Both the position numbers and the translations under genes were made by a program. The notes beneath the pieces were generated by a model. It saw only the letters and a program-made list of their open reading frames with translations, was not told the origin of the DNA and searched no databases. From the IMG/VR virus record IMGVR_UViG_3300023179_000009, positions 394,814 through 458,813 of that record: DNA of 64,000 nt, one strand, 5' to 3'. Numbering within the stretch: position 1 is the first letter of the stretch; each line of letters opens with the position of its first letter. Of this stretch, positions 2,331 through 36,454 are shown one piece after another.

Positions 2331-3887
2331 ATGGCTTATGAAAATTGTCCTTTTGATGTAACCCCTTATGATCAATCTAACTTGGTTAAAGTTCCCAATC
2401 TTGTAAACTTGAATTATACAAATCAAGATTTTTGGTCAATGAAATCCAGACTGGTTTCTTTCATAAAAGAAAAGTTTGCTGATTCTTTTAATGACTTTGT
2501 AGAGTCAGACTTGGCCATTATGCTCATTGAAAATTGGGCTTTTATTGCTGATACCCTGAGTTTTAAGATGGATCAAATAGCGAATGAAATATTTATAGAC
2601 ACGGTGAGCGAGGTTGATAACGCCTTTCGTTTAAGTTTGTTGGTGGGATTTAAACCTCAGCCGCCGATAGGATCAAGATCCTTATGGTCTGCAACAATAA
2701 ATAATGTTCTAGAGACAGACCTGGACATACCAACCCCGTTGCAGATTCCTTTTAACTCAGAACAGGGTCAAAGATATATTGAGCTTTTTGCAGCAGATGA
2801 GAACAACCAACCTATTTTTGGCCAAAACATTTACATACAAGCAGGTTCTTTTTTGACAACAGCCATAGTAGGTGTCGAAGGTCAAACTTTTGAGCAAAAT
2901 GCAAGAGGAACCGGTGAGTCAAATCAATTTATTAGTTTGCCACAAGGCCCAGTTCTTTCAAATTCCATAAAGGTATCGGTGGATGGCAATGAGTGGACAC
3001 AGGTCGAGTATTTTTCAGAGTCTCAACCCAAAAAAGAATTTAGAGTTGAGTATAACACAATTTACAACGCTTTTATAATTTTTGGAAACAATCGTGCTGG
3101 ACAAATACCTTCTTTGAACGCAGATATTCGTGTTTCGTATCGAGTGGGAGGTGGTGTAGTTGGAAATATAGTCACTGGGTCGGTTGAGGTTCAAAAAAAT
3201 TATATTGTTCCAGGTTTTGATTTTAGAGTTCCTGTGACTTTTAGAAATTACACCAAAGGTGAATTTGGTTATGCTGGTGATGGAATCGATGATATAAAAA
3301 GAAAATTACCACACTGGCTTAGGACACAAAATAGGGTTGTGTCCGGTGACGATATTGAAGCTTTTGCAAATCAGTTTTCAACTGACTATAATGGACAGAT
3401 TGGAAAAGCCAAAGCAGTTTTGAGAAATTATGGGTGTGCCGCAAATGTGATTGATCTTTATATTTTAGCAAGACAAGATCAAGACAATCTTGTGATCTCA
3501 GATAATGGTTTAAAAGTTGAATTGCTAGAATCTTTAGATAATAAAAAAATGATGACGGACCTTATTTGTATCAAAGATGGATCTATTATAGAAGTTGATG
3601 TTGCGATTGACATAACTATGGATAAATTTTATAGAAAATTTGAAGAAGAATTTTTAGAAAAAATAAATCGTCGTGTTAATAATTTTTTTCTTTTAAATAA
3701 TTGGGATTATGGAAAGACTCTAAACGCTGTTGATCTGATTAAAACCACCTCGGATGTTCCTGAAATAAGACAGGTTGAGGTAAATTTAAATACTTCAAAT
3801 GAATCTAACTCAGGTCTTGTTGTTACAACAAAATTTTATGAAATTATAAGACCAGCCAATATAGAAATCAACTTTATTTACGAATAA
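2331..3887 (+). CDS. gp6: Baseplate wedge subunit, gp6/baseplate J-like
   Basis: NYTNQDFWSMKSRL, NDFVESD, Y-R-V-G-G-G-x-x-G-N and Q-N-R-V-V-S-G-D-D motifs; follows gp25. Confidence 0.85.
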   Translation: MAYENCPFDVTPYDQSNLVKVPNLVNLNYTNQDFWSMKSRLVSFIKEKFADSFNDFVESDLAIMLIENWAFIADTLSFKMDQIANEIFIDTVSEVDNAFRLSLLVGFKPQPPIGSRSLWSATINNVLETDLDIPTPLQIPFNSEQGQRYIELFAADENNQPIFGQNIYIQAGSFLTTAIVGVEGQTFEQNARGTGESNQFISLPQGPVLSNSIKVSVDGNEWTQVEYFSESQPKKEFRVEYNTIYNAFIIFGNNRAGQIPSLNADIRVSYRVGGGVVGNIVTGSVEVQKNYIVPGFDFRVPVTFRNYTKGEFGYAGDGIDDIKRKLPHWLRTQNRVVSGDDIEAFANQFSTDYNGQIGKAKAVLRNYGCAANVIDLYILARQDQDNLVISDNGLKVELLESLDNKKMMTDLICIKDGSIIEVDVAIDITMDKFYRKFEEEFLEKINRRVNNFFLLNNWDYGKTLNAVDLIKTTSDVPEIRQVEVNLNTSNESNSGLVVTTKFYEIIRPANIEINFIYE

Positions 3888-20049: not shown

Positions 20050-20813
20050 TTGGAATTTACGCAATAAAAAATAAATTTAATAACAAACTTTATATCGGAC
20101 AGAGCGTGTCGATTAAATGTAGATGGATGAATCACAGATCAGATTTGGCCACGGGTAGGCATCCAAATAAACATTTGCTAAAATCTTATAAGAAATATGG
20201 AGAAGATTGTTTTGAATTTTTGATTTTAGAAAATTGTTTAAAAAGAGATTTGGGGAAAAAAGAAGAAGAGTGGATAAAAAAATTTCCTAAAAAACAACTA
20301 TACAATATAAACTATAACATTGTAGATTTAAATGGAGAAAAAAATCCTTTTTTTGGTAAAAAGCACAAAAAAGAATCCAAAAAGAAAATGTCAATTTGGA
20401 AAAAACAAAATTATATAGGTGCTAAAAATCCTAATTTTGGCAAAAAATGGACAAAAGAACAAAAAACCAAAAATGTTTTAAAAAATTCAAACACCAAATT
20501 AAAAAAAACTGATGTTCTGGAAATTAAAAAATTATTAATAGATGGCAAATTAGAAGATAAAGAAATTGCTAAAAAATTTAAAATTGGAAGATCCGTGGTA
20601 ACAAGAATTTCTAACGGAACAAGGTGGTCCCATGTAACAGGGGGAAGAGTAATAAAAAAAGAAAGGAGAGGTTTAAGGAACATAGGTGTTAAGAGGTCAG
20701 AGAAAACAAAACAAAAAATCAGAAATTCTATTTTGGGCATCAAAAGATCTGAAGAAACAAAACGCAAAATAAGTTTATCTAAACAAAAAAAGAAGGAGAA
20801 AAAATGTCAATAG
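20046..20813 (+). CDS. GIY-YIG homing endonuclease with NUMOD3-type repeats
   Basis: MIGIYAIKN...LYIGQS....RW..H, NPFFGKKHKKESKKKMS, RSEETKRKIS motifs. Confidence 0.9.
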   Translation: MIGIYAIKNKFNNKLYIGQSVSIKCRWMNHRSDLATGRHPNKHLLKSYKKYGEDCFEFLILENCLKRDLGKKEEEWIKKFPKKQLYNINYNIVDLNGEKNPFFGKKHKKESKKKMSIWKKQNYIGAKNPNFGKKWTKEQKTKNVLKNSNTKLKKTDVLEIKKLLIDGKLEDKEIAKKFKIGRSVVTRISNGTRWSHVTGGRVIKKERRGLRNIGVKRSEKTKQKIRNSILGIKRSEETKRKISLSKQKKKEKKCQ

Positions 20814-21817
20814 GAGCGGATGTCGGGACTTACAATCTGGTTTGCTGTAAAAGAAATGACAATGGGGATTTTGTTTACAAACGTGAAGTGAATGCTTTTT
20901 TGTCAATGCCTCTTGATAATGATTTTGTTTTTAACATGATGAAGCAGGCTGGCGTTCCACTTATTCACAGGGAAGACGCAAACATAGCATACGCTCTTGG
21001 CGAAGCAGCCGTTAATATGGCCTACACAATGACTCAATTAGAATTAAAAAGACCAATGAAAGATGGTTGTGTTAATCCGAAAGAACAAGATGCTTTTCAA
21101 ATTATGAATATTATGATCCACAATCTTTTGGATGAAATAAAGCACGATAAGGAAGTGCTAGTTTACTGTGTTCCCGCAAATGCTATAAACGAACAAACTG
21201 ATGCTGATTATCATCAAAAGATTGTTGAAGCAATATTTAAAGCATACAAGTCAGAGAAAGGTTTTACCGTAGATGCGAGACCAATAAATGAAGCAATGGC
21301 TCTTGTTTATGCCGAACTAAAGGACAAGATGTTCACTGGAATTGGGGTTTCATGCGGAGCAGGCTTAGTTAATGTTGCATTCAGTCTTTTTGGTGCTCCT
21401 GTTTTCAGTTTTGCTCTCGCCAATTCGGGGGATTGGATAGACAAACAAGCCGCTTTGGCAACAGGCGAGACGATAGCCTTTATTAATAAAACAAAAACAA
21501 AAATAGACTTAGACAAAGAACCCGCCAATTTAGTGGAACGTGCAATAATCACTCAATATCAATTAATGATTGAAAAAACAGTGGGTGGTATCAAAAAAGG
21601 TCTGGAAAATAATAAAGAAAAAAATGCAAAGTTAGATGCACCTGTTGATTTTGTTCTTGCTGGGGGAACGTCTTCTCCTCCAGGTTTTGCGAAAATGTTT
21701 GAAAAACTTTTAAGACAAACAAAACTTCCGATAGAAATAGGCCGTGTTATTCATCCAAGCGACCCATTATTTAGTGTTGCTCGTGGTTGCTTGGTGGCCG
21801 CTGAAAATATAAAGTAA
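20804..21817 (+). CDS. Actin-fold ATPase (MreB/FtsA/ParM superfamily)
   Basis: Phosphate-1 IGADVGT, connect-1 INEAMA, phosphate-2 GVSCGAG, adenosine VLAGGTS, connect-2 SVARGC. Confidence 0.85.
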   Translation: MSIGADVGTYNLVCCKRNDNGDFVYKREVNAFLSMPLDNDFVFNMMKQAGVPLIHREDANIAYALGEAAVNMAYTMTQLELKRPMKDGCVNPKEQDAFQIMNIMIHNLLDEIKHDKEVLVYCVPANAINEQTDADYHQKIVEAIFKAYKSEKGFTVDARPINEAMALVYAELKDKMFTGIGVSCGAGLVNVAFSLFGAPVFSFALANSGDWIDKQAALATGETIAFINKTKTKIDLDKEPANLVERAIITQYQLMIEKTVGGIKKGLENNKEKNAKLDAPVDFVLAGGTSSPPGFAKMFEKLLRQTKLPIEIGRVIHPSDPLFSVARGCLVAAENIK

Positions 21818-21824
21818 AGGTAAA

Positions 21825-22316
21825 ATGACTGTTCTAAAATTTGTAAATGATTTAGGTGTCGCCGCTTATGTGTTAATGCACGGCTACACTGTTGTTGGCA
21901 AAAAAGCAAAATCTATTTATTTTGAGTGTGAAAATATTGAATCATCTAAAGAATTTGATAAATTAGTTTTGGAATATCAACCACCAAATGATTTTTACAC
22001 ATTTGACTCTTGTCTCATGTTTTTGAAAAAAATCAACGAAAGTGTTCCAGAGGTTATCGATGATAGAATACATAAGACTGTCGGTGATCTTGGTGTGGCG
22101 GCTTATTTGTTGATGCATGAATATAGACCTAAAAGTATGGGCTTAAAGGTTATCGGCAAAAAAGGAAAATATGTATATTTCGAACACCCCGAGGGTCGTG
22201 GCGACGACTTTGAAAGATTGAGCTACCAATATCTGCCTAGTCAATTCCAAGTTTATGATTCTAATTTGATGGCTTTGAAAAAAATTGGCGAACATATGCC
22301 GAAGAATAGACCTTAA
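21825..22316 (+). CDS. Tandem-repeat protein, DUF5659-like
   Basis: Two internal copies of (N/G)DLGVAAY(V/L)LMH...V(V/I)GKK...YF. Confidence 0.6.
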   Translation: MTVLKFVNDLGVAAYVLMHGYTVVGKKAKSIYFECENIESSKEFDKLVLEYQPPNDFYTFDSCLMFLKKINESVPEVIDDRIHKTVGDLGVAAYLLMHEYRPKSMGLKVIGKKGKYVYFEHPEGRGDDFERLSYQYLPSQFQVYDSNLMALKKIGEHMPKNRP

Positions 22317-22365
22317 GAAAAGTTTTCTTTCGATATATATATTTAGAAATATCGAAAAGGTGACC

Positions 22366-25300
22366 ATGAAAAGTTTTATAGAGTATAGAAAAAACAAATT
22401 GCTTAAAGGCAATAAATTAAATATTCAAGAATCTATTATTGAATGCTTTGATCTTTTAAAATTAGATCTATTAAAATCTATAAAATTACCGGATATCCTC
22501 TCTGAGAACACTAGAGTCAAAGCAATCACTGAATCTGCTTATGAAGTTTGTAAAAAAGAAGATTATCAAGACAATAAACAAATAATAGAATTAATAATTT
22601 CCGAATTTAAAAATAATTTTTGGTCACAATTGATATCGGAGGCGACTGCAACCGCTGAAAAAGAACCTAAGGTTACTGTTGATGATTTAAAAAAACAAAT
22701 GTCGGATGAAATAGACTCGATGGTTGGCGAATTAAAACAATTAGTTTCTCGCTCATTATCTGCCTCAAGAACAACAACCGGAAATGACGTTGAGGATGCA
22801 ACAACAAGTTCAACCGAACCCGGTGAAGAAAATTCACCAACACCCAAACTTACCGCAAATCAAGCAAAATACATAAGTGATTTGTATCAAAAATTAGGAA
22901 GAAACCCTCCGTCTGATCTTGATAAACTAAATCCTTTACAAGCCAGTAGGCTTATAGATCAATTAAAAAAACAAATAGGAGCGAGAACAGGATCGCCTGC
23001 TCCATCTTCGTCTCAATTCAACGCCAATCAAACGACTAGCGGGGATGCTGGTGGTGAAGATTTTTCATTAGACGAACCTACTTCTTCGCCAGCCAGTTCT
23101 TCTCCACTTCCTAGTCAACAGGTTATGAATGGAAGATATGTTTTGCCAAATGATTGGAAAAGCAAATACGGAACAAGATATGGCACTGAGAGACCGACAT
23201 ATCCTGACGGGTTTAAACCAGCACCATATGGACACATGAGACCGAGCGATGGTTGGCTAGGTGGTTTGAAAAGAACAATTTGGGATCCTGCTACCGGCTG
23301 GCTAAAAAATAAAACCAGGAACTTTAGAAGACGCTGGCACAGAGATGAGTTTAGAGAACATTTTATTAATTTAGAAAATATATTCTTGGAAAATGCTGTG
23401 GAGATCATGAGTGATATTGACACATGGACCACAAGATTGAAAGATATTGTTTTAAATAAATACTTTGATCAAATTAAAAACTTTTTAAGTGGAGATGTTC
23501 AATCTTTGCCAAAAACCAAAGATTCCGTCGCCGGGAAAACTGGCGATGTTAGTCCAAGACAACAATCGCCCGCTGTTGATGCTGGATCTGGTAAAGTTGA
23601 TGACGACGATGTTGAATACGAAGACGATAATAAGGCCGAAGGCCCCACAGGTGATGTTCAACCCAAGAAATCAAATGATGCTTCCGTCGATTCCAATATT
23701 CAAAAAACTGATTTTACAAAGAAGGAAAGCATATCTGAAGGTGCAAATTTATTGAAGCTGACTTATAGGGACGATAAATTTTACACTTCTAATTCTAATG
23801 AAGAATTAGAGGGAAGTGTTTTGAGAAATTTTTTAATCAGGCAACTTTTAAAGATTTTTCAAAAAGATCAAAAATTACAAGATGAAGTTTGGAAATCAAA
23901 AGATCTAAAAGAAAGAGATGAAGCCGAAGCAAGGTTGGATAAAATTATTGCTAGCTCAATCAAAAGACCCACGGATTTTGAACTACAAATAATAAATGAA
24001 TGGCTTGGTAAATTTGAATCTATTGCATTAACCGGCTATAGCAATAAAAAAACAAATTTTCCTTTAATTTTGGCATATTTCAAATGGCATAAAAAAGAAA
24101 AGTATGGGTTAGATATTAAAACCAATAAAAGAGAACCTAGAAAAACCGAGGGCGATGACTCTGGTGAGGTTGCAGCAAAAAAACAAGATTTAACACCTGA
24201 GCAAAAAAAAGATTTGGAAGAATTCAATAGATTTAAAAAAGAATTCCCTAAAGCTTATAAAAAGTTAATTGATAGTTTCGAAGGCGGAACCGAAGAGGAG
24301 CGGATTAAAGATACCGAAGTTTGGGTTTTAGAGGCGGGCTTAGGAGAAGAATCTGAATTAAAACAAATTATTGAATTTCTAAAAAAACAATCAGGTGAAG
24401 AGTCACAAGAATCAGGTGAAGAGTCACAAGAATCAGGTGAAGAGTCACAAGAATCAGGTGAAGAGTCACAAGAATTAAAAAAAAAATCCCTAACTGATGA
24501 GGAATTTATTTTTAGTTTGCAAAAAAAATGGTTTGAGAACAATAAGTCAACATTAGATTTAAGAGATGTTTTAACAAACAAATTCATTGACAGCGGGAAA
24601 GGGCCGCTAACATTAGATGATCTCAAAAATATAGTTAGTGATTTTGATTTGGAAGACAAAGATCAAATTGAAGAAGCTAGGCAAAAAGTTATGGATGCTG
24701 TTAGAAAGCACCCTATAACTTTGGAAAGAAAAAAAGTAAATAGAGATCAATTAAAAAAAACTAAAGACTCAGATGTAGTTGACCCCGAAACTACGACAAT
24801 AAAAATAAATTCAAACAAAGAAGAAGAGAACCAGATTAAAGATGAACTGGACGAGAATGAAGTTTATCAAAGAATTTATGAAAAATATCAAAATTATCTA
24901 ATTAGCAAAGGCTCAAAAGGAGATGATTTAAGAAATGGCCTAGATTTGTTTGACGAAAAAATTATACAAGATATTTTATTGAAAGGCAAAGATAAAATTG
25001 AAGACATTCTATCTACGCAAGAAAGTCTTTTAGACAATTTGATTGAAAAAATCAAAAAAGATCCCGTACCCGAAAATTCGGATGTGCCCGAGGAGTTAGA
25101 GTCTTCTTTTGAAAAATTAGAAAGAGACACGCAGTACAAAGATTTGACAAAGCAATATGTTGATTCGTTGAGAGGTCAAGGAAAAGATGAAGAAACTATA
25201 AAAAAAGAATTGCATAAAAAAACATTAAAACATGCAAAAGAAATGTTTGATCAAGAAAAAACAATAAAACAAATTGTTCAAGATTATGAAAAAGAATTGG

Positions 25301-25959
25301 GCATAATCCCCGAAGAAAGTCCAGATAAAACTAAATCTTCGCAAAAGTCAGATTCTCAAGAAGAAATCAATAGGATCGCAAGAGATTCAGGGGAAATTAC
25401 TCGAACATCTTCGGGAGATAATGAGGGAACAACTAAATTAGGTGAAGAAAAAAATATAGAAAAAACTATAAAAGACATAACAAAACATGTTAAGTTGCAG
25501 GGCGGCAGTTTGTCTCTAAGAGATGGGAAACTTTTAATTAAAAACAGAGATAAATTAGATAAAAAAACTCAAAATTTAATTAAAAAACACAGGGAAGAAA
25601 TAATAGATTTTTTAACCCCAAAAGAAACAAGATCTCAGAAGACATCGCCAGAAGAAGCAATTGAAAAAAAAGTTAAGCCCGATGATAAAAAACTTGAAGA
25701 AATCCCTGAGAGATTAAAAAATATAGATGGATACGATTCATTGAGACAAGAAATAATAAAAATAATTGAGGGCAGCAATAATCAAGTGATGCGTAATATT
25801 TTAATGAGAAAAGAGTCAGAGTGGCTGGATTCAGATTTGGATGACAATCAAATAATAAAAAATTTAAGAGAATTAAAAAATCGTTTTGAGTCTCAAACAA
25901 GAAAAACTGAGGGTTTTTTGGGGATATTAAAAAGATTTAAAGAGTTAGTTAATTCATAA
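22366..25959 (+). CDS. Very large charged protein with CTS-like N-terminus (putative internal/ejection protein)
   Basis: Start MKSFIEYR at 22366 after AAGGTGA; low-complexity K/E/D content; DUF3072-like and TubC_N-like segments. Confidence 0.6.
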   Translation: MKSFIEYRKNKLLKGNKLNIQESIIECFDLLKLDLLKSIKLPDILSENTRVKAITESAYEVCKKEDYQDNKQIIELIISEFKNNFWSQLISEATATAEKEPKVTVDDLKKQMSDEIDSMVGELKQLVSRSLSASRTTTGNDVEDATTSSTEPGEENSPTPKLTANQAKYISDLYQKLGRNPPSDLDKLNPLQASRLIDQLKKQIGARTGSPAPSSSQFNANQTTSGDAGGEDFSLDEPTSSPASSSPLPSQQVMNGRYVLPNDWKSKYGTRYGTERPTYPDGFKPAPYGHMRPSDGWLGGLKRTIWDPATGWLKNKTRNFRRRWHRDEFREHFINLENIFLENAVEIMSDIDTWTTRLKDIVLNKYFDQIKNFLSGDVQSLPKTKDSVAGKTGDVSPRQQSPAVDAGSGKVDDDDVEYEDDNKAEGPTGDVQPKKSNDASVDSNIQKTDFTKKESISEGANLLKLTYRDDKFYTSNSNEELEGSVLRNFLIRQLLKIFQKDQKLQDEVWKSKDLKERDEAEARLDKIIASSIKRPTDFELQIINEWLGKFESIALTGYSNKKTNFPLILAYFKWHKKEKYGLDIKTNKREPRKTEGDDSGEVAAKKQDLTPEQKKDLEEFNRFKKEFPKAYKKLIDSFEGGTEEERIKDTEVWVLEAGLGEESELKQIIEFLKKQSGEESQESGEESQESGEESQESGEESQELKKKSLTDEEFIFSLQKKWFENNKSTLDLRDVLTNKFIDSGKGPLTLDDLKNIVSDFDLEDKDQIEEARQKVMDAVRKHPITLERKKVNRDQLKKTKDSDVVDPETTTIKINSNKEEENQIKDELDENEVYQRIYEKYQNYLISKGSKGDDLRNGLDLFDEKIIQDILLKGKDKIEDILSTQESLLDNLIEKIKKDPVPENSDVPEELESSFEKLERDTQYKDLTKQYVDSLRGQGKDEETIKKELHKKTLKHAKEMFDQEKTIKQIVQDYEKELGIIPEESPDKTKSSQKSDSQEEINRIARDSGEITRTSSGDNEGTTKLGEEKNIEKTIKDITKHVKLQGGSLSLRDGKLLIKNRDKLDKKTQNLIKKHREEIIDFLTPKETRSQKTSPEEAIEKKVKPDDKKLEEIPERLKNIDGYDSLRQEIIKIIEGSNNQVMRNILMRKESEWLDSDLDDNQIIKNLRELKNRFESQTRKTEGFLGILKRFKELVNS
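24391..24474 (+). repeat. Perfect 21-bp tandem repeat x4 (encodes SGEESQE)
   Basis: TCAGGTGAAGAGTCACAAGAA four times in frame. Confidence 0.95.
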
Positions 25960-26442
25960 TTATTTTTTAAATATCTGATCCTGTGCTTCGAATGTTCTTC
26001 TAGATTGTTCAGCTAAACTTTCTAAACTTGCTATATCAACAAAAGAAGCATCTCCTTGCTGATCCTGCTCTGCTTCTTTTTTTTCAATAATAGGAAGAGT
26101 TTCTTGTTGGGGTTTGTTTTTTACTTTTGCTTTTATATCGCTTTCTAACTTCTCTCCAGTTCTTTCTTCATATTCTTTTATCATTAAAGCGTGTTCGGGA
26201 TTGCTTGAATCTAATTCAACTTCTTCATGAATTGAAATTATATGTTGCGTTGTGAAAAAACTCACAAGGTCATCGTTGTATGGGTGTGTTCCCCAAATTC
26301 CATCAGAATTTATAGTTTGAACTCTAATGACGAAGTGTTCACGAGAAATAGTTTCATCAAAACTTCTATTCATAGATGTGGTCACAACACTACACACTTT
26401 TCCAACAAAATATTGAAGTTCTTTGATTGTGTTTGAAGTCAT
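25960..26442 (-). CDS. Hypothetical protein
   Basis: 160-aa ORF converging on the large gene. Confidence 0.55.
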   Translation of the reverse strand: MTSNTIKELQYFVGKVCSVVTTSMNRSFDETISREHFVIRVQTINSDGIWGTHPYNDDLVSFFTTQHIISIHEEVELDSSNPEHALMIKEYEERTGEKLESDIKAKVKNKPQQETLPIIEKKEAEQDQQGDASFVDIASLESLAEQSRRTFEAQDQIFKK

Positions 26443-26474
26443 AATTTTTTAAATAATAATGGTAAATAAATTAT

Positions 26475-26798
26475 ATGCCATCAAAAAGCAAAAGTCAACA
26501 AAGATTGTTTGGAATAATTCATTCTTGTCAAAAGAATGAAAAGAAAAAGATATGCTCAGAGCCTAGTATTAAAAAAATTATACAAAATATTAGTAAAAAA
26601 GACGCAAAAGATTTTGCCAGCACAAAACATGAAGATTTGCCCGAGAGGTTGGAGAGTTTTAAAAATTGGCTTGAAAGCCAAAAAGGAGAAAAAATGGAAG
26701 AAAACAAATGTATGTGCGATTGCCCACCTTGCAAAAGTGGCGATTGCTCAAGCTGCACCTGCAAAAATTGTAAATGTGAAAACTGCACTTGCAACTAA
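26475..26798 (+). CDS. DUF3008-like protein with a C-terminal metallothionein-like Cys-rich tail
   Basis: MPSKSKSQQRLFG...AKDFASTKHEDLPE, then 11 Cys in the last 29 residues. Confidence 0.65.
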   Translation: MPSKSKSQQRLFGIIHSCQKNEKKKICSEPSIKKIIQNISKKDAKDFASTKHEDLPERLESFKNWLESQKGEKMEENKCMCDCPPCKSGDCSSCTCKNCKCENCTCN

Positions 26799-27856
26799 AT
26801 TTTATTTGCCAAAAGTATAGGGCGAGTGTCTTTTGTAAACAATTTAATGTATTTGTTTACGTAAGATACTAGTGTTTCTAAATTTTTATTTACTAAAAGA
26901 CCATTCCAATCTTTGTAGATTTTAGGTGGTCTAACGAAGTATATTTCTTTAAATCCTTTTGAAAGCAAATTTTCGCCAATATTAAGCATTGCCTCCAAGC
27001 CAGCCTCATCTGAGTCGAATGCTAAAACCGGCACAAAGTCTTTAATTAAATCTATTTGTGTTTCTGATAAGAATTTACCGCCACAAGCACAAGCATTTAA
27101 TCCTGCTTGTTTAATTGTGAGTGCATCAAACTCTCCCTCCATTATAAACAATTTTTCTCCTAAACAATTCCAATTAGTCATAAATAAAACATTTTTTTGA
27201 TCCACTACAGAGGTGGGGCATTTCATATATCGAAGTGTATTCCTCCGATCTGTTATGGATCTTGCGTTGTAATAAATTAAATTACTAGATTTATCATAAT
27301 ATGGAATAACTATTCTATTTTTGTATTCGCCCGAAACACAAACATATAAACCTTCACAATTTATTTTTCTGGCAGTTAGGTATTGTTCGGCTTTTTTCTT
27401 CATAAAATGATGAGGGTATTCCGCCGAGATCAAATAGGAATGGGGCGGCAACTGGAGATCGACTTTTTTTTCTTTGTCTTCGTGTCTGACAATATTGTTG
27501 CTTTGATTAAAGAAATCATGAACTTTTTCTTCGAGATCACGAAGAGAAGAACCCTCAGATATTCTGTATTCGGCTTCTTCCCAGTCAACTTTATCTAGTT
27601 CTGAAACCAAGCCAACCAAGGATCCCATTTGGTCCGTCAACCAACATCTATATGATCCGAATTCAGGATGTTTAGACTTTCCCCCGCTTGGATTCATCCA
27701 TAAGTGAAATTTGTTGTCTGTTTTGCCGAGTTTATCCTCTGACCAAGGAGAATTAGTACATATTTCTGTTCCGTGTGCTGTGTTTCTAAGTTTTATGTTA
27801 TGCTCTCCAAACTTTTGTTTAGACCATTCATAAAACAAATCAAAATCAACTGACAT
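26795..27856 (-). CDS. gp61: DNA primase (T4 gp61/DnaG-like)
   Basis: RIVIPYY...YYNARSI, Toprim FIMEGEFDAL, AFDSDEAG, PPKIYKDWN. Confidence 0.9.
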   Translation of the reverse strand: MSVDFDLFYEWSKQKFGEHNIKLRNTAHGTEICTNSPWSEDKLGKTDNKFHLWMNPSGGKSKHPEFGSYRCWLTDQMGSLVGLVSELDKVDWEEAEYRISEGSSLRDLEEKVHDFFNQSNNIVRHEDKEKKVDLQLPPHSYLISAEYPHHFMKKKAEQYLTARKINCEGLYVCVSGEYKNRIVIPYYDKSSNLIYYNARSITDRRNTLRYMKCPTSVVDQKNVLFMTNWNCLGEKLFIMEGEFDALTIKQAGLNACACGGKFLSETQIDLIKDFVPVLAFDSDEAGLEAMLNIGENLLSKGFKEIYFVRPPKIYKDWNGLLVNKNLETLVSYVNKYIKLFTKDTRPILLANKI

Positions 27857-27921: not shown

Positions 27922-28758
27922 ATGGATATAAATCACCTGTCAGTTAGTAGAAAAAAGACATTCGATCAGTGTTCGCAGTTATACAAATTCAAATATCATC
28001 TCAAAACACCTTCGCCGCAACCAGAGCCTTTTTACTTTGTGTATGGAAATTTGGTTCACAAAATAGCGGAGTTGTATGTTGCCGAAAAGGGGTCTAAAGC
28101 AATAGACAAAATAGCCTTAGATGTGCTGCATGGAAAAATCGAATTAAAAGAGGGCAAAAAATGTCCCAAATTGCCAAAAGAATATCAAAATAAAATAGGC
28201 AAAGACATAAAGGCAATTAAAAATTTAACAAAAAAAATAGGATTTGATGGTTATGTTGAATATGATTTTACTTACGATTTGGACCCGCCAAACAAAAAAA
28301 ATGTTATAGGTTTTATAGACCGATTGATAATAAAGGAAGATTCAAAACAAAAAAAAGCTTTTATAATTGATTATAAGACAACCAAAAAAGGAAAACATCG
28401 ACTTAACAACGAAACTGTTTTATATGACTTACAACTTAGATGTTACTGTAGAGTGGTTCAAAAAATATTTGACATACCAGCGTCGAATATAAAGGCGGCA
28501 CTTTTTTATTTAGATGGAGAAAATTTGATCGCTGCCCAATACAACCAAGACTCACTAGATAGGGTTGAAAAAGAATTAAAAAATGGATATGTGACTATTG
28601 AAGAAACAAAATCAGAAACAGTTCGTGGTAGTGTTGGGTGGCACTGCAAAAACTGTGAGTATTCGAGCATTTGTCAATTTTATAAATCCCAAAATCAATC
28701 AAATGAATCTTGGAATGGGGATTTGTTGGAATTGGGACACGATAATTCTTGGAATTAA
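27922..28758 (+). CDS. PD-(D/E)XK RecB/Cas4-like exonuclease
   Basis: HLSVS...C..LY, GNLVH, GFIDRL, IIDYKT, QLRCY, C-terminal HCKNCEYSSIC Cys cluster. Confidence 0.9.
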   Translation: MDINHLSVSRKKTFDQCSQLYKFKYHLKTPSPQPEPFYFVYGNLVHKIAELYVAEKGSKAIDKIALDVLHGKIELKEGKKCPKLPKEYQNKIGKDIKAIKNLTKKIGFDGYVEYDFTYDLDPPNKKNVIGFIDRLIIKEDSKQKKAFIIDYKTTKKGKHRLNNETVLYDLQLRCYCRVVQKIFDIPASNIKAALFYLDGENLIAAQYNQDSLDRVEKELKNGYVTIEETKSETVRGSVGWHCKNCEYSSICQFYKSQNQSNESWNGDLLELGHDNSWN

Positions 28759-31551: not shown

Positions 31552-31866
31552 TTAAAAATAAATTTTATGTCTTAAAAAACAATCTTTTTTAAGATTGTTT
31601 TTGTTGATGGGACATATCTTTTTCTCAACAACTTGCACTTGTTTTCCAAATTGATCTTGTTTAAAAGTAACTATTGTTTGCAATTTACCATATTTTTTTT
31701 GCCACAAATCTAAAGGAGAATCACCTAAGGCCAAAGATGGACTATTGCAGTTTGATTTTTGCTGGCAACAGCCGCAACCGCTATTGTTCTCGGGCTTTTT
31801 TCTTCTTTGATATTCTAGGGAAGATTTGCCGGGACTATAGTCAAAACAAGACATTTTTAACCTCAA
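31552..31866 (-). CDS. Hypothetical protein with CGCC motif
   Basis: 104-aa ORF overlapping the metalloprotease stop. Confidence 0.4.
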   Translation of the reverse strand: MRLKMSCFDYSPGKSSLEYQRRKKPENNSGCGCCQQKSNCNSPSLALGDSPLDLWQKKYGKLQTIVTFKQDQFGKQVQVVEKKICPINKNNLKKDCFLRHKIYF

Positions 31867-33308
31867 GAAATAAATTTTCTTTGTAATTTTCCATTTACAA
31901 TTTCAAAGGGAGCGTTTGCATTTTGGGAAACTTGATTTGTTTCTTTTAAATAGTTTAAAGCATCCATTGCACCCACTATGTCCTCTTCTTCGGTTGTTGA
32001 TAGGGAGTCGTAAATATTATTGTTTAGATCATAAAGATAAATTTTTTCGTTTGGAATTTCTACTTCAACATCGTAAAGAAAATTTTGTTCGGATTGTGAG
32101 GAAATTATATAATCTTTTAATTTTATACTCAGGAGATTCGATTTTTTAACAAAAAATTCGTTATTTTCACATTTTGGAGCCGAAAGCATTTTCACTTGTG
32201 TTGTTAATAAATTTCTTTTCTTAAAAATTTCTTGTATTTTATCTTGATATTTTCCATCCCCCAAGATCATGTCAGCCCACAGTATTGTTTTTGCTACTGA
32301 TTGGTAAAATTTAGAGTTTAAAGGAGCGTGTTGCATTGCTTTTAAAACATATTTTAAAGAAATGTCTCTTGATTGTTTTAAAGACTCCAAACAATCTAAG
32401 GAATTTCTTTTGTCTTCGTATATCAAAACTATTAAATCATAAAAAGCACCCAAAAAGATACGACCAAAACTGTGGCACTCAGCCGCAATATTATCATCTG
32501 TGTTCTCTGCTGGTAAAGAATTTGGATTAACATACTTAAAGTCATTTATTGCAGATCTTAAACAATCTTTATTTCTTCCGGAGTTGGGCTTCGACAACTT
32601 ATAAACCGCTTGTCCAAATTGTTCGGCCAAATTTGATATTATGTTTGGCTTTTTCATGTCGCCATTCGTTTGATTAATCGCATATTCTAATATTTCTTGA
32701 TGACTCATTATGTTTACAATCGCTATAAAATCAGCGAATGCTTCGTGCATTGACATTATTTCTAAAGACATGGCACTCCAAGTCTCTGGTCTATAGGCGT
32801 CAAGTATTGCGTGTCCTAATTCATGTGCCACAATATCGCTTGAATCGCAAGCAAATAAGGATCCGCCTATTTGTGGATTATTAATATAAAAAAATCTCAA
32901 GGATTTACGGTCATAGTAAGCATTTAAGTCAACGCCAGCTCTTGGAAAAACTTGTAAAGAAGAAGCCCCAGGCCAGTTTGGTATTTTTTTATTTGTTTGA
33001 GAATTTACAACGTTTAGAGTATTTGAAATTGTAATATAGCAATTTGCTGCTTGTCCTTCCGCCGATATTCTATTATACCCGCCACCTTTGTATCCTATAA
33101 TGTTAAAAAATGGAGCATTAGTTTGTTGAGGAGGTATAATTTTTTTTGTTAAAAGTGGAGTAGATGGGTCACTAATCAGGTAGTCTACTGGTTTACTATT
33201 CGAAACATTTTCTTTTTTAATTATTTTTGTCTCAACCCTGCTTCTTAATATAGAAGAAAAATGTTTTTTAAGGTTAAAATAATTAATAAATTTTTCAAAT
33301 AAATACAT
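31863..33308 (-). CDS. Zinc metallopeptidase, thermolysin/fungalysin (M4/M36)-like
   Basis: LNAYYD, IVAHELGHAILD (HExxH), HEAFADF third ligand, ECHSFGRIF. Confidence 0.85.
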   Translation of the reverse strand: MYLFEKFINYFNLKKHFSSILRSRVETKIIKKENVSNSKPVDYLISDPSTPLLTKKIIPPQQTNAPFFNIIGYKGGGYNRISAEGQAANCYITISNTLNVVNSQTNKKIPNWPGASSLQVFPRAGVDLNAYYDRKSLRFFYINNPQIGGSLFACDSSDIVAHELGHAILDAYRPETWSAMSLEIMSMHEAFADFIAIVNIMSHQEILEYAINQTNGDMKKPNIISNLAEQFGQAVYKLSKPNSGRNKDCLRSAINDFKYVNPNSLPAENTDDNIAAECHSFGRIFLGAFYDLIVLIYEDKRNSLDCLESLKQSRDISLKYVLKAMQHAPLNSKFYQSVAKTILWADMILGDGKYQDKIQEIFKKRNLLTTQVKMLSAPKCENNEFFVKKSNLLSIKLKDYIISSQSEQNFLYDVEVEIPNEKIYLYDLNNNIYDSLSTTEEEDIVGAMDALNYLKETNQVSQNANAPFEIVNGKLQRKFIS

Positions 33309-34464: not shown

Positions 34465-34824
34465 TCAGTCAACAAACATGGCTGCGATTGGGAATCTTTC
34501 CAAAGTAGTTGAAGTAACATTCTTTCTCTTGGCTTTTGCAGCAACCTTAAGCCTGCTGTAATCGTTCCATCTTGCAATTCTGTCTTTTCGATAACTCTTG
34601 ATCTTTTTCCCAACTTCAGAAATTGTTCTTGACACATTTCCTTCTCTTAGCTCGTAACCCCTGATTTGTTCCTTTGTTTCTTCAACAACTAAAACAGTTC
34701 TTCTTACAGGGTGACTGTGGTTGCCTTGGTAATAAAACTTTGCAACTGGCAGTCTCGAAACCGGCTCGTAAACTTTATTAACAGTCTTCATTGAAATCCC
34801 TTTTGTTAGTGTTAATGTCCACAC
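34465..34824 (-). CDS. Stand-alone WYL-like domain protein
   Basis: FYY...RRTV...GYELR...KSYRKDRI resembles the WYL (SH3-like) pattern. Confidence 0.5.
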   Translation of the reverse strand: MWTLTLTKGISMKTVNKVYEPVSRLPVAKFYYQGNHSHPVRRTVLVVEETKEQIRGYELREGNVSRTISEVGKKIKSYRKDRIARWNDYSRLKVAAKAKRKNVTSTTLERFPIAAMFVD

Positions 34825-34843
34825 GCTTTTGGCGATAAATCAT

Positions 34844-34872
34844 TTTATATTAAAAAATAAATTATTTGTCAA
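34844..34872 (-). promoter_or_regulatory. Sigma70-type promoter TTGACA-N17-TATAAA
   Basis: Perfect -35 and near-perfect -10 with 17-nt spacing upstream of the WYL-like gene. Confidence 0.75.
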
Positions 34873-35321
34873 ACGCATTTTTCTTTAAGATATGGAAGTA
34901 TGAATTGGTTAAGTTCCAATGCTGTTTTTTGGCTATCCTGCAATTGATCTTCGTAGAATAAGTGAACGTAAGATTCGTGAGCGTTACCCGAATCAGTTGA
35001 CGTTTCTCGTAATCTCACAGCATACAAGTTTGATACTTCTTGCTCCATTTCTTGAGCATATTTTAAAATTTCAAAAGGACAGGTCAGGTCTATGGGGAAC
35101 GGGTTTGCTTCTTGTTGTGGGATGCCGCCTAATTGCACTATAAGACGAGCAAATTCCTCCACGTGCTTGTGTTCTTCAAATGATTCTTTAATCAAAAACT
35201 CAGAGAGTTCCTCTCTGTGGAGACCTTGGATCATTGTGCCTGCTTGCAGGTAAAAAAGCATATGCTTTCTTTCATTTTTTAAATCATTTTGAAGCATCAA
35301 GATTAAATCGTCATTTTTCAT
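34869..35321 (-). CDS. Ferritin/bacterioferritin-like di-iron protein
   Basis: E-x-x-H motifs (ESFEEHKH), LIVQLGGIP, AQEMEQE four-helix-bundle pattern. Confidence 0.85.
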   Translation of the reverse strand: MKNDDLILMLQNDLKNERKHMLFYLQAGTMIQGLHREELSEFLIKESFEEHKHVEEFARLIVQLGGIPQQEANPFPIDLTCPFEILKYAQEMEQEVSNLYAVRLRETSTDSGNAHESYVHLFYEDQLQDSQKTALELNQFILPYLKEKCV

Positions 35322-36454
35322 TTTTGTTCCTTGTGATAATGATGATTGAATGGCATCTCTGGGTTGCCGTGATCATGATTGTAATCCATTTGTTTAAATT
35401 TAGCAAAATTAAATTCGGGGGCAGATTTTGAATTGATAATATTTAAGCCCAACTCAAAAGCATATTTTGTAATTTGTTCTAACCCCTCATAATTAATTTT
35501 ATCTGGTGTGTCGTCGGGGGTGTGATAATTAGAGTGAAGACCTGTGTGTAAAAAAGCTATTGGTATTTTTTTGTTGTAAAAAGAAGCATGATCTGATCCC
35601 CCCGAGGTTCTTCCTGTAATTTTTTTTGCAAATTTGTATTTTTGATTTAAATCATTAATTATTCTACTGACATCGAAGGAACTATCACCTTCTGAAAATC
35701 CAGCAAAATAATGCCCTTTATCCAAATAACCAACCATGTCTAAATTGATCATAAAAACATGTTTTTTTATATCGGGTTTTTCTTCTGGGAATAAAGGATT
35801 TTCACAATAGTGACGACTGCCAATCAGACCCATCTCTTCTGCTGAGTAGGCTTGAAAAACAACCGTTCTTTTAAGATCTTCTTTTATTAAAGAAAACGCT
35901 TTTGCCAATTCTATCAAAGCCACTGTTCCAGATGCGTTATCGTCGGCACCTGGATGAACTTCTCTTCTATTTGGGGTTCTACTCATTGATGGCCCATAAC
36001 CTATATGGTCCATGTGAGCGCCGATCACTACAATTTCATCCTTAACATTTTTGTCATTTCCTTTTATTATTGCATAAATGTTTTGGGTAAAGTCATCGCC
36101 CGATTCATTTTTTGGTCCGAAATTTGTTTTTCTTATAGAAAATTTTTGATAAAAAGTTTTTAATCCAAAACTTTCAAATTTCTTTTTTATGAACTCTGCG
36201 GCCATTATATTGCCTTTTTTGCCGCTCATTCTTCCTTCTAGTTCATTACTAGATAAATAATCTAAGTCTTGTTTAAGATTTTTTGATGAAATTCCAGATA
36301 TCGCTTGTTCAATTGTGTTTTTTGGTGTGTTATCTATTTTTTCAACTTTTGGTTCATTTGGTTTTATTGGTTTTTCTTTTTTATATTCAATCAATAGTAT
36401 TGATACAAAGATGATTGTTGTTACGCAAAATAATATTGGTATTAATTTTTTCAT
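35318..36454 (-). CDS. M28 family aminopeptidase with N-terminal membrane anchor
   Basis: GAHMDH, GADDNASG, SAEEMGLIGS, NLDMVG, SDHASF, YHTPDD. Confidence 0.9.
   Translation of the reverse strand: MKKLIPILFCVTTIIFVSILLIEYKKEKPIKPNEPKVEKIDNTPKNTIEQAISGISSKNLKQDLDYLSSNELEGRMSGKKGNIMAAEFIKKKFESFGLKTFYQKFSIRKTNFGPKNESGDDFTQNIYAIIKGNDKNVKDEIVVIGAHMDHIGYGPSMSRTPNRREVHPGADDNASGTVALIELAKAFSLIKEDLKRTVVFQAYSAEEMGLIGSRHYCENPLFPEEKPDIKKHVFMINLDMVGYLDKGHYFAGFSEGDSSFDVSRIINDLNQKYKFAKKITGRTSGGSDHASFYNKKIPIAFLHTGLHSNYHTPDDTPDKINYEGLEQITKYAFELGLNIINSKSAPEFNFAKFKQMDYNHDHGNPEMPFNHHYHKEQK

What the first reader, a model, noticed from the sequence alone, without database searches (positions are those of the whole stretch)
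26694..26798. Metallothionein-like 34-aa peptide with its own ribosome-binding site
Seen: MEENKCMCDCPPCKSGDCSSCTCKNCKCENCTCN has 11 Cys in CxC/CxxC spacing and no aromatic residues. It is in frame at the end of a DUF3008-like ORF but is preceded by AGGAG, so it could be made separately or as a fusion. Known: this composition is typical of metallothioneins. Inference: a phage-encoded Zn/Cu/Cd buffer or redox sink; I know of few described examples.
Basis: partly seen in the sequence, partly recalled or inferred. Interest (0 to 1): 0.6.

Follow-up and report, generated by a model that had tools for sequence, protein, structure and literature searches.

The report
Phage protein with captured 11-cysteine mini-domain
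A jumbo phage carries a small protein whose last 34 residues are a conserved 11-cysteine, metallothionein-like module; the same module exists as never-annotated free-standing 30-37-residue genes beside a stress sigma factor in many Flavobacteria, so it is a real, portable and probably metal-binding mini-domain whose function has not been tested.

Summary
Window 26694-26798 encodes a 34-aa stretch with 11 Cys and no aromatic residue or His. It lies in frame at the end of a 107-aa DUF3008 ORF (26475-26798) and follows AGGAG-N5-ATG.

It is a conserved domain, not chance. All 11 Cys are invariant in every phage homologue found, and dN/dS is about 0.02-0.1. No homologue has a stop between the two parts, so the fusion protein is real.

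The new result is that the tail belongs to an unannotated family. Free-standing ORFs of 30-37 aa with the same Cys spacing occur in 34 of 201 sampled Flavobacteriaceae genomes. They usually sit directly upstream of an ECF sigma factor, behind a conserved ECF-like promoter motif. Other phages fuse the same module to a prohead protease.

The internal SD and ATG are kept in all four lineages of this jumbo-phage clade, and they would give a peptide the size of the bacterial ones. More distant fusions lack them. Separate translation is therefore plausible (about 40%) but unproven.

No curated metallothionein family matches. Metal binding is inferred from composition only.

Verdict: a new variant of a known kind (a metal-thiolate mini-domain) in a new context. 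Interest is moderate to high.

The parts
26475..26798 (+). Whole ORF, 107 aa plus stop: DUF3008 domain, linker and 11-Cys tail. Its 3' end overlaps the convergent primase gene by 4 nt.
   Evidence: The exact protein is on record on 5 contigs.
26463..26468 (+). TAAATA motif 6 nt before the main ATG. The main start has no Shine-Dalgarno sequence. It may be a T4-late-type promoter or short-leader signal (inferred).
   Evidence: An (A)TAAATA motif lies 5-15 nt upstream of the start in every phage homologue examined. TAAATA lies 4-6 nt before the ATG in 15 genes of this genome, and 38 genes have it within 30 nt against about 11 expected.
26484..26648 (+). DUF3008 domain (residues 4-58), a helical, Lys-rich domain with two conserved Cys (C18, C27).
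   Evidence: Pfam PF11450 at 28.3 bits. AF2 gives helices with pLDDT about 85. Shape look-alikes in the ESM Atlas are all viral.
26649..26693 (+). Linker (residues 59-73): a conserved FKxW helix followed by a disordered stretch.
   Evidence: AF2 predicts helix 60-69, and residues 71-78 have pLDDT below 50. Alignment A3.
26684..26688 (+). Internal Shine-Dalgarno sequence AGGAG, 5 nt before the internal ATG.
   Evidence: GGAG lies 5-9 nt before a conserved ATG in all six members of the syntenic clade, which form four lineages.
26694..26798 (+). The reported 34-aa segment (M74-N107) plus stop. It is a possible separately translated product.
   Evidence: It aligns end to end with free-standing bacterial ORFs of 30-37 aa.
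26709..26792 (+). The 28-residue Cys11 core (C79-C106), spacing CxCxCxxCx4CxxCxCxxCxCxxCxC.
   Evidence: All 11 Cys are invariant. dN/dS is 0.02-0.1 with saturated dS. A profile built from bacterial peptides alone hits it at E 9e-8, the only hit in the genome.
26795..27856 (-). Convergent neighbour: a Toprim DNA primase. It is the conserved syntenic partner of the gene.
   Evidence: Pfam and PHROG hits. Synteny.
25960..26442 (-). Divergent neighbour: a 160-aa protein of unknown function, conserved in synteny. Only 32 nt separate the two start codons.
   Evidence: No family hit.

Best explanation
The segment is the C-terminal domain of a real 107-aa late phage protein built from two modules.

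**N-terminal module.** DUF3008 is a virus-specific helical domain. In other phages it carries many different C-terminal cargoes, and in one cyanophage it is found in virions.

**C-terminal module.** A disordered linker tethers a 28-residue Cys11 mini-domain. This mini-domain is a portable unit shared with free-standing bacterial mini-proteins of 30-37 aa. The phage lineage most likely gained it by in-frame capture of such a minigene together with its own SD and ATG.

**Inferred mechanism.** The 11 thiolates wrap a small metal cluster, about 3-4 Zn(II)/Cd(II) or more Cu(I), as metallothionein domains do. The protein therefore carries or sequesters metal, or uses the cluster as a metal- or redox-sensitive fold.

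**Products.** In this jumbo-phage clade the retained internal SD-ATG may also yield the free 34-aa peptide.

**Shown:** the ORF, the domain architecture, conservation, purifying selection, homology to the bacterial mini-ORFs, and the alternative fusions.

**Inferred:** metal binding, late or virion expression, internal initiation, and the direction of capture.
For: **The fusion is real.**
- DUF3008 hit.
- No stop between the two parts in 13 or more homologues.

**The tail is under selection.**
- All 11 Cys are invariant, while Cys codons switch between TGT and TGC.
- Tail dN/dS is 0.02-0.1.

**It is a portable module.**
- The same spacing sits at the C-terminal part of a Peptidase_S78 prohead protease, within a TerL-portal-protease-MCP head module.
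- It is fused to PurS in a Propionibacteriaceae MAG and repeated in a signal-peptide protein of a Gastranaerophilaceae MAG.

**Bacterial homologues exist.**
- There are 47 unique free-standing ORFs of 30-37 aa, 48-65% identical to the tail over a gapless core.
- A profile of the bacterial peptides alone hits only this ORF in the phage genome (E 9e-8).
- 34 of 201 sampled genomes of the family carry one.
- Third positions of the Cys codons vary freely.

**The two modules look independent.** AF2 gives DUF3008 pLDDT about 85, the linker below 50 and the tail 55-65.

**Internal start.**
- AGGAG-N5-ATG matches the genome's own ribosome-binding-site consensus.
- GGAG and the ATG are kept in four lineages although dS is saturated.
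- This holds even where KGEK became KEEK, which is coded with the minor codons AAG GAG GAG.

**Late or virion hint.**
- A TAAATA motif lies upstream in all homologues examined.
- The DUF3008-only protein SSCSM1_93 is annotated 'virion protein' in a record whose paper identified virion proteins by mass spectrometry (PMC9602691).

**Metal context (weak).** A ferritin-like gene and M28 and M36 metallopeptidase genes lie 5-10 kb away.
Against: - No Pfam, NCBIfam or PDB metallothionein match, even at E<=10.
- AF2 models of the tail have low confidence, and no fold match was found.
- Metal binding is inferred from composition alone.
- No RNA evidence was found.
- Distant fusions lack the internal Met and SD, so free peptide is not a general requirement. 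The SD-like string could simply reflect a Lys/Glu/Gly-rich linker.
- The virion inference rests on a distant DUF3008-only homologue and on a short AT-rich motif in an AT-rich genome.
- The bacterial context (an ECF sigma operon) suggests regulation rather than buffering.
- The direction of transfer between phage and bacteria was not tested with a tree, because the core is too short.
Confidence: 0.6

Rival explanations
1. **Regulatory mimic.** In Flavobacteria the Cys11 mini-protein would be a metal- or redox-sensing partner of the ECF sigma factor it is co-transcribed with, acting as a mini anti-sigma or co-factor. The phage copy, as a fusion or as free peptide, would titrate or mimic that pathway to blunt or trigger a host stress response.
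For: - The same ECF sigma family lies directly downstream on the same strand in 21 of 34 loci and in 17 of 20 further loci.
- A GC[AG]TC-N16-NGTCT motif with a fixed spacer lies 26-30 nt before the ATG in 29 of 48 upstream regions, against 1.4% background. Its CGTC-type -10 element is typical of ECF promoters (my own knowledge).
- There is a precedent for Cys-rich metal-sensing control of ECF sigmas: CorE and CorE2 (PMC8999054).
- One distant phage fusion lies two genes from a phage sigma factor.
Against: - No binding evidence exists.
- The phage encodes no relative of that ECF sigma.
- The host is unknown, and the phage genome uses SD sites, which is atypical for Bacteroidota.
- Co-transcription fits equally well if the peptide is simply a sigma-induced metallothionein.
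- The tail has no His and no HxxxCxxC anti-sigma motif.
Confidence: 0.15
2. **Structural clasp.** The Cys11 module would be a compact structural knot, held by Zn or by disulfides formed once outside the cell. It would stabilise or anchor a capsid-interior or virion protein and play no role in metal homeostasis.
For: - The module is fused inside a prohead protease, upstream of that protein's C-terminal peptide.
- A DUF3008 homologue is annotated as a virion protein.
- A late-promoter-like motif lies upstream.
Against: - The free-standing cytoplasmic bacterial versions have nothing to anchor.
- Arrays of 11 Cys in 28 residues with CxC spacing are typical of multi-metal clusters, not of single structural Zn sites (my own knowledge).
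- The odd number of Cys does not fit a fully disulfide-paired knot.
Confidence: 0.12
3. **RiPP precursor.** DUF3008 would serve as a leader peptide and the Cys-rich C-terminus as a core that is modified after translation (thioether, ranthipeptide or azoline type).
For: The layout of an N-terminal leader and a Cys/Ser/Thr-rich C-terminal core ending at the stop codon resembles RiPP precursors. Flavobacteria encode many RiPPs (my own knowledge).
Against: - No radical-SAM, YcaO or lanthionine-synthetase gene lies next to the phage gene or the bacterial ORFs. The neighbours are a primase and a PD-(D/E)XK nuclease, or an ECF sigma and an IcmF-like mutase.
- No NCBIfam RiPP-precursor model matches.
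- The bacterial ORFs have only 1-7 residues before the core, so they have no leader.
- In the S78 and PurS fusions the module is part of an enzyme.
Confidence: 0.03
4. **Two separate genes.** The DUF3008 part and the 34-aa peptide would be distinct genes, and the fusion would be an artefact of a missing stop codon or an assembly error.
For: A strong internal SD-ATG is present, and the peptide equals the bacterial free-standing ORFs in size.
Against: - The frame is open in independent assemblies of six clade members and in seven or more distant fusions.
- Contigs from other runs show no stop or indel in the parts of the gene they cover (the linker-tail junction and tail); none spans the whole ORF.
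- The distant fusions have no Met before the tail.
Confidence: 0.03

Closest known systems
Metallothioneins (e.g. the beta-domain of vertebrate MT; the comparison is from memory, not tested by alignment)
   Same: About 30% Cys, CxC and CxxC runs separated by Lys, Ser, Thr, Asn or Glu, no aromatic residues or His, and a domain size of about 30 residues. Eleven Cys equals the count of the vertebrate alpha-domain, which holds four divalent ions.
   Different: No significant sequence match to any Pfam metallothionein family or PDB chain. The module is fused to a helical viral domain. Its bacterial relatives are ECF-sigma-linked mini-ORFs. Metal binding has not been shown.
Bacterial metallothioneins SmtA/BmtA (Pfam Metallothio_Pro)
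   Same: A small prokaryotic Cys-rich protein that may handle metal.
   Different: SmtA/BmtA use Cys and His ligands within a zinc-finger-like fold, are about 55 aa long and contain aromatic residues (my own knowledge). No hit was found here.
CorE/CorE2 Cys-rich C-terminal domain of ECF sigma factors (PMC8999054)
   Same: A Cys-rich metal-sensing element tied functionally to an ECF sigma factor. This resembles the genetic linkage seen for the bacterial relatives of the tail.
   Different: In CorE the Cys-rich domain is part of the sigma factor. Here it is a separate ORF of about 33 aa upstream of the sigma gene, and in the phage it is fused to DUF3008. Sequence similarity was not tested.
DUF3008 (PF11450) phage proteins, e.g. 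SSCSM1_93 of Synechococcus phage S-SCSM1
   Same: The same N-terminal domain. The gene lies near a DNA primase in both genomes.
   Different: Most DUF3008 proteins lack Cys tails and carry other C-terminal extensions, including Zeta-toxin-like, S-AdoMet-lyase and DUF6321 domains.
SCIFF/ranthipeptide and other Cys-rich RiPP precursors
   Same: A short Cys-rich C-terminal peptide.
   Different: No maturase neighbour, no model hit, and no leader in the bacterial forms.

Membership tests
Metallothionein (operational class) | Low molecular weight, about 15-35% Cys in CxC/CxxC/CC motifs, and few or no aromatic residues or His | tested here: met
   The tail has 11 Cys in 34 residues and no F, W, Y or H. 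The full 107-aa protein does contain F12, F47, F62 and W65 in the DUF3008 and linker part, so only the domain qualifies.
Metallothionein (curated sequence families) | A significant match to a Pfam or NCBIfam metallothionein model or to a solved metallothionein | tested here: not met
   No family matched at E<=10 for six tails or for ten peptides in NCBIfam. phmmer and a profile against PDB gave no hit. Foldseek gave no hit.
Metallothionein (operational class) | Forms metal-thiolate clusters with defined stoichiometry | not testable with these tools
   This needs expression with Zn, Cd or Cu followed by native MS or ICP-MS.
DUF3008 (PF11450) | A match above the Pfam gathering score | tested here: met
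   28.3 bits against a cut-off of 24, over residues 4-58. PHROG families of unknown function also match residues 1-78.
Cys11 mini-protein family (defined here; not in Pfam or NCBIfam) | Core spacing CxCxCxxCxxGxCxxCxCxxCxCxxCxC, ending within 0-3 residues of the stop codon | tested here: met
   The core aligns without gaps at 48-65% identity. A profile built from bacterial peptides alone gives E 9e-8.
Cys11 mini-protein family (defined here) | A free-standing ORF of 30-37 aa directly upstream of an ECF sigma factor, behind a GCATC-N16-CGTCT motif | tested here: not met
   The phage copy is fused to DUF3008. Its upstream region lacks the motif, and the genome encodes no relative of that sigma factor. 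Only the internal SD-ATG would recreate the free-standing form.
RiPP precursor (SCIFF/ranthipeptide, lanthipeptide, LAP) | An adjacent maturase gene and a match to a precursor model | tested here: not met
   The neighbours are a primase, a PD-(D/E)XK nuclease and unknown proteins in the phage, and an ECF sigma and an IcmF-like mutase in bacteria. No NCBIfam hit.
Zinc-binding anti-sigma (ZAS) domain | An HxxxCxxC motif within an anti-sigma domain of about 80 aa | tested here: not met
   The tail has no His, is only 34 aa long, and gives no Pfam anti-sigma hit.

The most novel reading that the evidence does not exclude
The Cys11 mini-protein is a previously unrecognised metal- or redox-sensing partner of an ECF sigma factor, widespread in Flavobacteriia. 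Phages have repeatedly captured it: it is fused to a virion-delivered DUF3008 carrier and to a prohead protease. In this jumbo-phage clade it would also be expressed as a free peptide from an internal start, to mimic or titrate that host stress-signalling pathway at infection.
Probability: 0.12. Interest if true: 0.85.

Novelty: new variant of a known kind. Interest (0 to 1): 0.62.

Why it matters
- **A missed gene family.** The work exposes a conserved mini-gene family of about 33 aa and 11 Cys that gene callers have missed entirely. None of 10 exact peptides is among about 15 billion catalogued proteins.
- **It is common.** The family is present in roughly one in six sampled Flavobacteriaceae genomes and is wired to an ECF sigma factor.
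- **Phages reuse it.** Phages have recruited the same module at least twice, with different carriers.
- **If it binds metal,** it is a new prokaryotic and viral metallothionein-type domain, and one of very few phage-encoded candidates.
- **If it regulates the sigma factor,** it is a new kind of minimal sensor.
- **Possible dual coding.** The conserved internal ribosome-binding site gives a testable case of one phage gene making both a fusion protein and a free peptide.

Tried and rejected
- **Degenerate DNA pattern.** The census of fusions therefore rests on the narrower patterns that the search for related loci derived.
- **Family and sequence searches.** Pfam at E<=10 on six tails, NCBIfam on ten peptides, and PDB by sequence and by profile all gave nothing.
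- **Tail-only homologue search.** The search for homologous proteins with the 40-aa tail found no candidate; a 34-aa query was too short. This is explained: the bacterial peptides are not catalogued as proteins.
- **ESM Atlas features for the tail.** Scores were about 0.8, which is noise level.
- **Folds.**
  - AF2 of the whole protein modelled DUF3008 well, the linker poorly and the tail at pLDDT 55-65.
  - AF2 of the tail alone reached only mean pLDDT 64.
  - Foldseek and VIA gave no meaningful match, with Z<=3.
- **Complex prediction.** Complex prediction on the Flavobacterial ECF sigma, the peptide and Zn returned 'no answer'. It counts neither for nor against binding.
- **RNA evidence.** No run on record as RNA holds the region. 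Two metatranscriptome contig sets laid on it gave nothing.
- **PHROG 'ferrochelatase' label.** The gene next to the fusion in L078 carries this label, but Pfam did not corroborate it, so it is not used as evidence.
- **Fusion partners of DUF3008.** Pfam on ten large DUF3008 proteins found no informative partner.
- **Literature.** DUF3008 gave no papers. Phage or Flavobacterial metallothionein searches and 'Cys-rich small protein plus ECF' searches found nothing describing this family.
- **Rejected readings.** A chance low-complexity stretch, a RiPP precursor, and two separate genes.

Full report
**1. What is in the sequence**

Window 26475-26798 (+ strand) is a 107-aa ORF.
- Residues 4-58 match Pfam DUF3008 at 28.3 bits against a cut-off of 24. 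Residues 1-78 match several PHROG families of unknown function.
It has 34 aa, 11 Cys and no aromatic residue or His, and it ends at TAA 26796-26798.
- AGGAG (26684-26688) lies 5 nt before the internal ATG at 26694.
- The main ATG (26475) has no Shine-Dalgarno sequence. It lies 6 nt after a TAAATA motif (26463-26468).
- The gene converges on a Toprim primase (26795-27856, -), overlapping it by 4 nt. It diverges from a 160-aa ORF of unknown function (25960-26442, -).

**2. Genome context**

- The window is the last 64 kb of a 458,813-bp virus record. It has 35% GC and dense coding.
- It encodes a T4-type baseplate wedge protein, large terminase, portal and gp23-like major head protein.
- The nearest catalogued phage is an uncultured 595-kb genome, LR756511. 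Its major head protein is 78% identical and its primase 38% identical.
- Runs holding the region are mostly lake and freshwater metagenomes, with four seawater and a few unspecified ones at low word shares.
- The host is unknown.
- The genome uses Shine-Dalgarno sites moderately. GGAG lies at -18..-3 for 16.5% of crude gene starts against 2.7% background. AGGAGAAA is the most enriched SD-type 8-mer upstream of genes.

**3. The tail is a conserved, translated domain**

- Five close homologues, from 59-86% identity up to the exact protein, occupy the same syntenic slot: large ORF, then a 165-aa ORF (-), this gene, primase (-) and a PD-(D/E)XK nuclease. A sixth homologue (P0075, 192 aa, with a longer linker) is syntenic too.
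- All are continuous ORFs, and all 11 Cys are invariant.
- Between lineages the synonymous sites of the tail are saturated, while dN stays at 0.01-0.23. Where it can be computed, omega is 0.02-0.1, as low as or lower than in the DUF3008 core. Cys codons switch between TGT and TGC.
- An exhaustive profile-free search of 1.84 billion representatives found 2,032 DUF3008 relatives. Among the best 150, further Cys-tail fusions turned up from non-syntenic phages: P0076, P0079, P0080, P0092, P0094 and a degenerate P0163. IMG/VR adds L078 and L079.
- Most DUF3008 proteins carry other tails.
- In LR756511 the slot beside the primase holds a 182-aa ORF with no Cys tail and no Pfam DUF3008 hit. The tail is therefore a lineage-specific cargo.

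**4. The module is portable and has free-standing bacterial relatives**

- Searching with the tail alone found the same spacing (CxCxCxxCx4CxxCxCxxCxCxxCxC) inside the C-terminal part of a Peptidase_S78 prohead protease. That protease sits in a TerL-portal-protease-MCP module of GC-rich phage contigs. An orphan fragment lies beside a TnpB-like gene.
- In prokaryotic genomes and metagenomes the module appears as free-standing ORFs of 30-37 aa (mode 33): a Met, then 1-7 residues, then the Cys11 core, then a stop. These occur in Polaribacter, Tenacibaculum, Kordia, Lacinutrix, Psychroserpens, Aureibaculum, Namhaeicola, Frigoriflavimonas, Saprospiraceae and Cytophagales.
- The phage's 34-aa segment aligns with them end to end at 48-65% identity, without gaps in the core.
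- A profile built from 47 bacterial peptides alone finds the phage ORF as the only hit in the six-frame translation of the phage genome. Its E-value is 9e-8 and the next best is 0.59.
- In 46 unique bacterial cores, Cys codon positions 1 and 2 are essentially invariant while position 3 varies freely, with entropies of 0, 0.01 and 0.82 bits. These ORFs are therefore coding.
- 34 of 201 sampled genomes of the family of a Polaribacter MAG carry one full-length copy in a short open frame.
- None of 10 exact peptides is in the 15-billion-protein collection. No Pfam or NCBIfam model matches. The family is unannotated, and I found no paper on it.
- Other contexts are a PurS fusion in a Propionibacteriaceae MAG, a short ORF in Kocuria, and a signal-peptide protein with several repeats in a Gastranaerophilaceae MAG.

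**5. Context of the bacterial relatives**

- One ECF sigma family (Sigma70_r2 plus r4_2, about 180 aa) lies directly downstream on the same strand, across gaps of 0-250 nt. This holds in 21 of 34 loci and in 17 of 20 further loci.
- Upstream, 29 of 48 unique regions carry GC[AG]TC-N16-NGTCT with a fixed spacer, 26-30 nt before the ATG. Background is 1.4%. A CGTC-type -10 element is typical of ECF promoters (my own knowledge).
- The mini-protein is thus probably the first gene of an autoregulated ECF operon.
- CorE-type sigma factors are a precedent for Cys-rich metal sensing in ECF control (PMC8999054).
- The phage gene lacks that motif, and the phage encodes no relative of that sigma factor. 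The phage does have three other sigma-70-family ORFs.

**6. One product or two?**

*For an internal start:*
- Only 0.49% of internal in-frame ATGs in this genome have AGGAG upstream, and the site matches the genome's own ribosome-binding-site consensus.
- GGAG lies 5-9 nt before a conserved ATG in all six syntenic clade members, which form four lineages, although dS is saturated.
- This holds where KGEK became KEEK. There it is coded AAG GAG GAG, although AAG is used at 13-20% and GAG at 25-29%.
- The product would have the architecture of the bacterial free-standing peptides.
- AF2 models the linker just before M74 as disordered.

*Against:*
- The non-syntenic fusions have no Met or SD before the tail.
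- No relative has a stop between the two parts.
- The purine-rich string also codes a Lys/Glu/Gly linker.
- There are no RNA or ribosome data.

I put a functional internal start at about 0.4. The fusion protein is certain as an ORF.

**7. What DUF3008 adds**

- AF2 gives a small helical domain with no solved look-alike, Z<=3.
- Its shape look-alikes in the ESM Atlas are all viral. Some are fused to Zeta-toxin-like, S-AdoMet-lyase or DUF6321 domains. DUF3008 therefore behaves as a carrier for varied cargo.
- The DUF3008-only protein SSCSM1_93 of Synechococcus phage S-SCSM1 (PF11450, 30.7 bits) is annotated 'virion protein'. It also lies near a primase. The paper identified 45 virion proteins by mass spectrometry of CsCl-purified particles (PMC9602691).
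- An (A)TAAATA motif lies 5-15 nt before the start in all phage homologues examined. In this genome, 15 genes have TAAATA 4-6 nt before the ATG. This resembles T4-type late promoters (my own knowledge).
- Late expression and virion association are therefore plausible but inferred.

**8. Mechanism**

The best-supported reading is a metal-thiolate cluster mini-domain. The reasons are:
- 11 invariant Cys in 28 residues, in CxC and CxxC runs;
- no other ligand types;
- Lys, Asn, Ser and Thr spacers;
- independence from the rest of the protein;
- function both alone and as an appendage to unrelated proteins.

By analogy with metallothionein domains (my own knowledge), it should hold about 3-4 divalent ions or more Cu(I). 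I could not decide whether its role is buffering or delivery, a metal- or redox-sensitive switch (as the ECF linkage suggests), or a structural clasp in a packaged protein. I rank them in that order, with the regulatory reading as the most novel. A ferritin-like gene and two metallopeptidase genes nearby are weak support for a metal theme.

**9. Novelty**

Metallothionein-like domains are a known kind. This sequence family, its ECF-linked mini-ORF form and its phage fusions are in none of the libraries or papers I could search. I rate it a new variant of a known kind, with moderate to high interest. The biochemical claim remains wholly untested.

Noticed in passing
L092-L129 and L135-L154 (bacterial loci); e.g. 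L099:3001-3099 (peptide) and L099:3228-3767 (sigma): Flavobacteriia carry an unannotated operon of an 11-Cys mini-ORF (about 33 aa) and an ECF sigma factor, behind a GC[AG]TC-N16-NGTCT motif. An IcmF-like MeaB-mutase fusion often lies upstream. In Polaribacter, a PAS protein and a dienelactone hydrolase lie downstream.
   Followed up: partly
L088:3428-4144 (also L087, L089): A Peptidase_S78 prohead protease carries the same Cys11 module between its protease domain and its C-terminal peptide. It sits in a TerL-portal-protease-MCP head module of a GC-rich phage.
   Followed up: partly
L086:3970-4090: An orphan 10-Cys copy of the module with no ATG, GTG or TTG start lies close to a TnpB/IS605-type gene. 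It may be the remnant of a gene disrupted by an insertion.
   Followed up: no
L090:2749-3207; L100 and L122:about 2800-3093: A Gastranaerophilaceae MAG has a signal-peptide protein with several Cys-module repeats. A Propionibacteriaceae MAG has the module fused to the C-terminus of PurS.
   Followed up: no
window 20804-21817 (+): An actin-like protein matches Pfam Volactin (E 5e-69). This is a phage-encoded actin homologue.
   Followed up: no
window 34869-35321 (-), 35318-36454 (-), 31863-33308 (-): A ferritin-like protein, an M28 aminopeptidase and an M36-like metallopeptidase are encoded 5-10 kb from the Cys11 gene. Together they form a cluster of metal-dependent or metal-handling genes.
   Followed up: no
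window 22285-25959 (+): A 1,224-aa highly charged, low-complexity protein with tandem SGEESQE repeats lies upstream of the gene. A large ORF is conserved at this position in relatives (1,154 aa in L002).
   Followed up: no
G000:C1, genome-wide, mostly outside the window: The motif TGATACCAACTAG is about 10-fold enriched within 45 nt upstream of genes. Its ACCAACTA core occurs 103 times on the + strand and 11 times on the - strand. It is a candidate phage-specific promoter or regulatory element.
   Followed up: partly
G000:C1:159075-159521 (+), 267245-267409 (+), 34792-34956 (-): The phage genome encodes three sigma-70-family ORFs, in open frames of 308, 294 and 180 aa. None is close to the Flavobacterial ECF sigma linked to the mini-ORFs.
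   Followed up: partly
window 27922-28758 (+): A PD-(D/E)XK nuclease with a weak Cas4 hit and a C-terminal Cys cluster (C-x2-C-x5-C) lies beside the primase. It is conserved in synteny.
   Followed up: no
L130:5919-6836 (-) and L130:8398-8604 (+): In the phage contig carrying the distant fusion P0080, a 305-aa sigma factor lies two genes away, with CsrA and ParB-like genes nearby.
   Followed up: no
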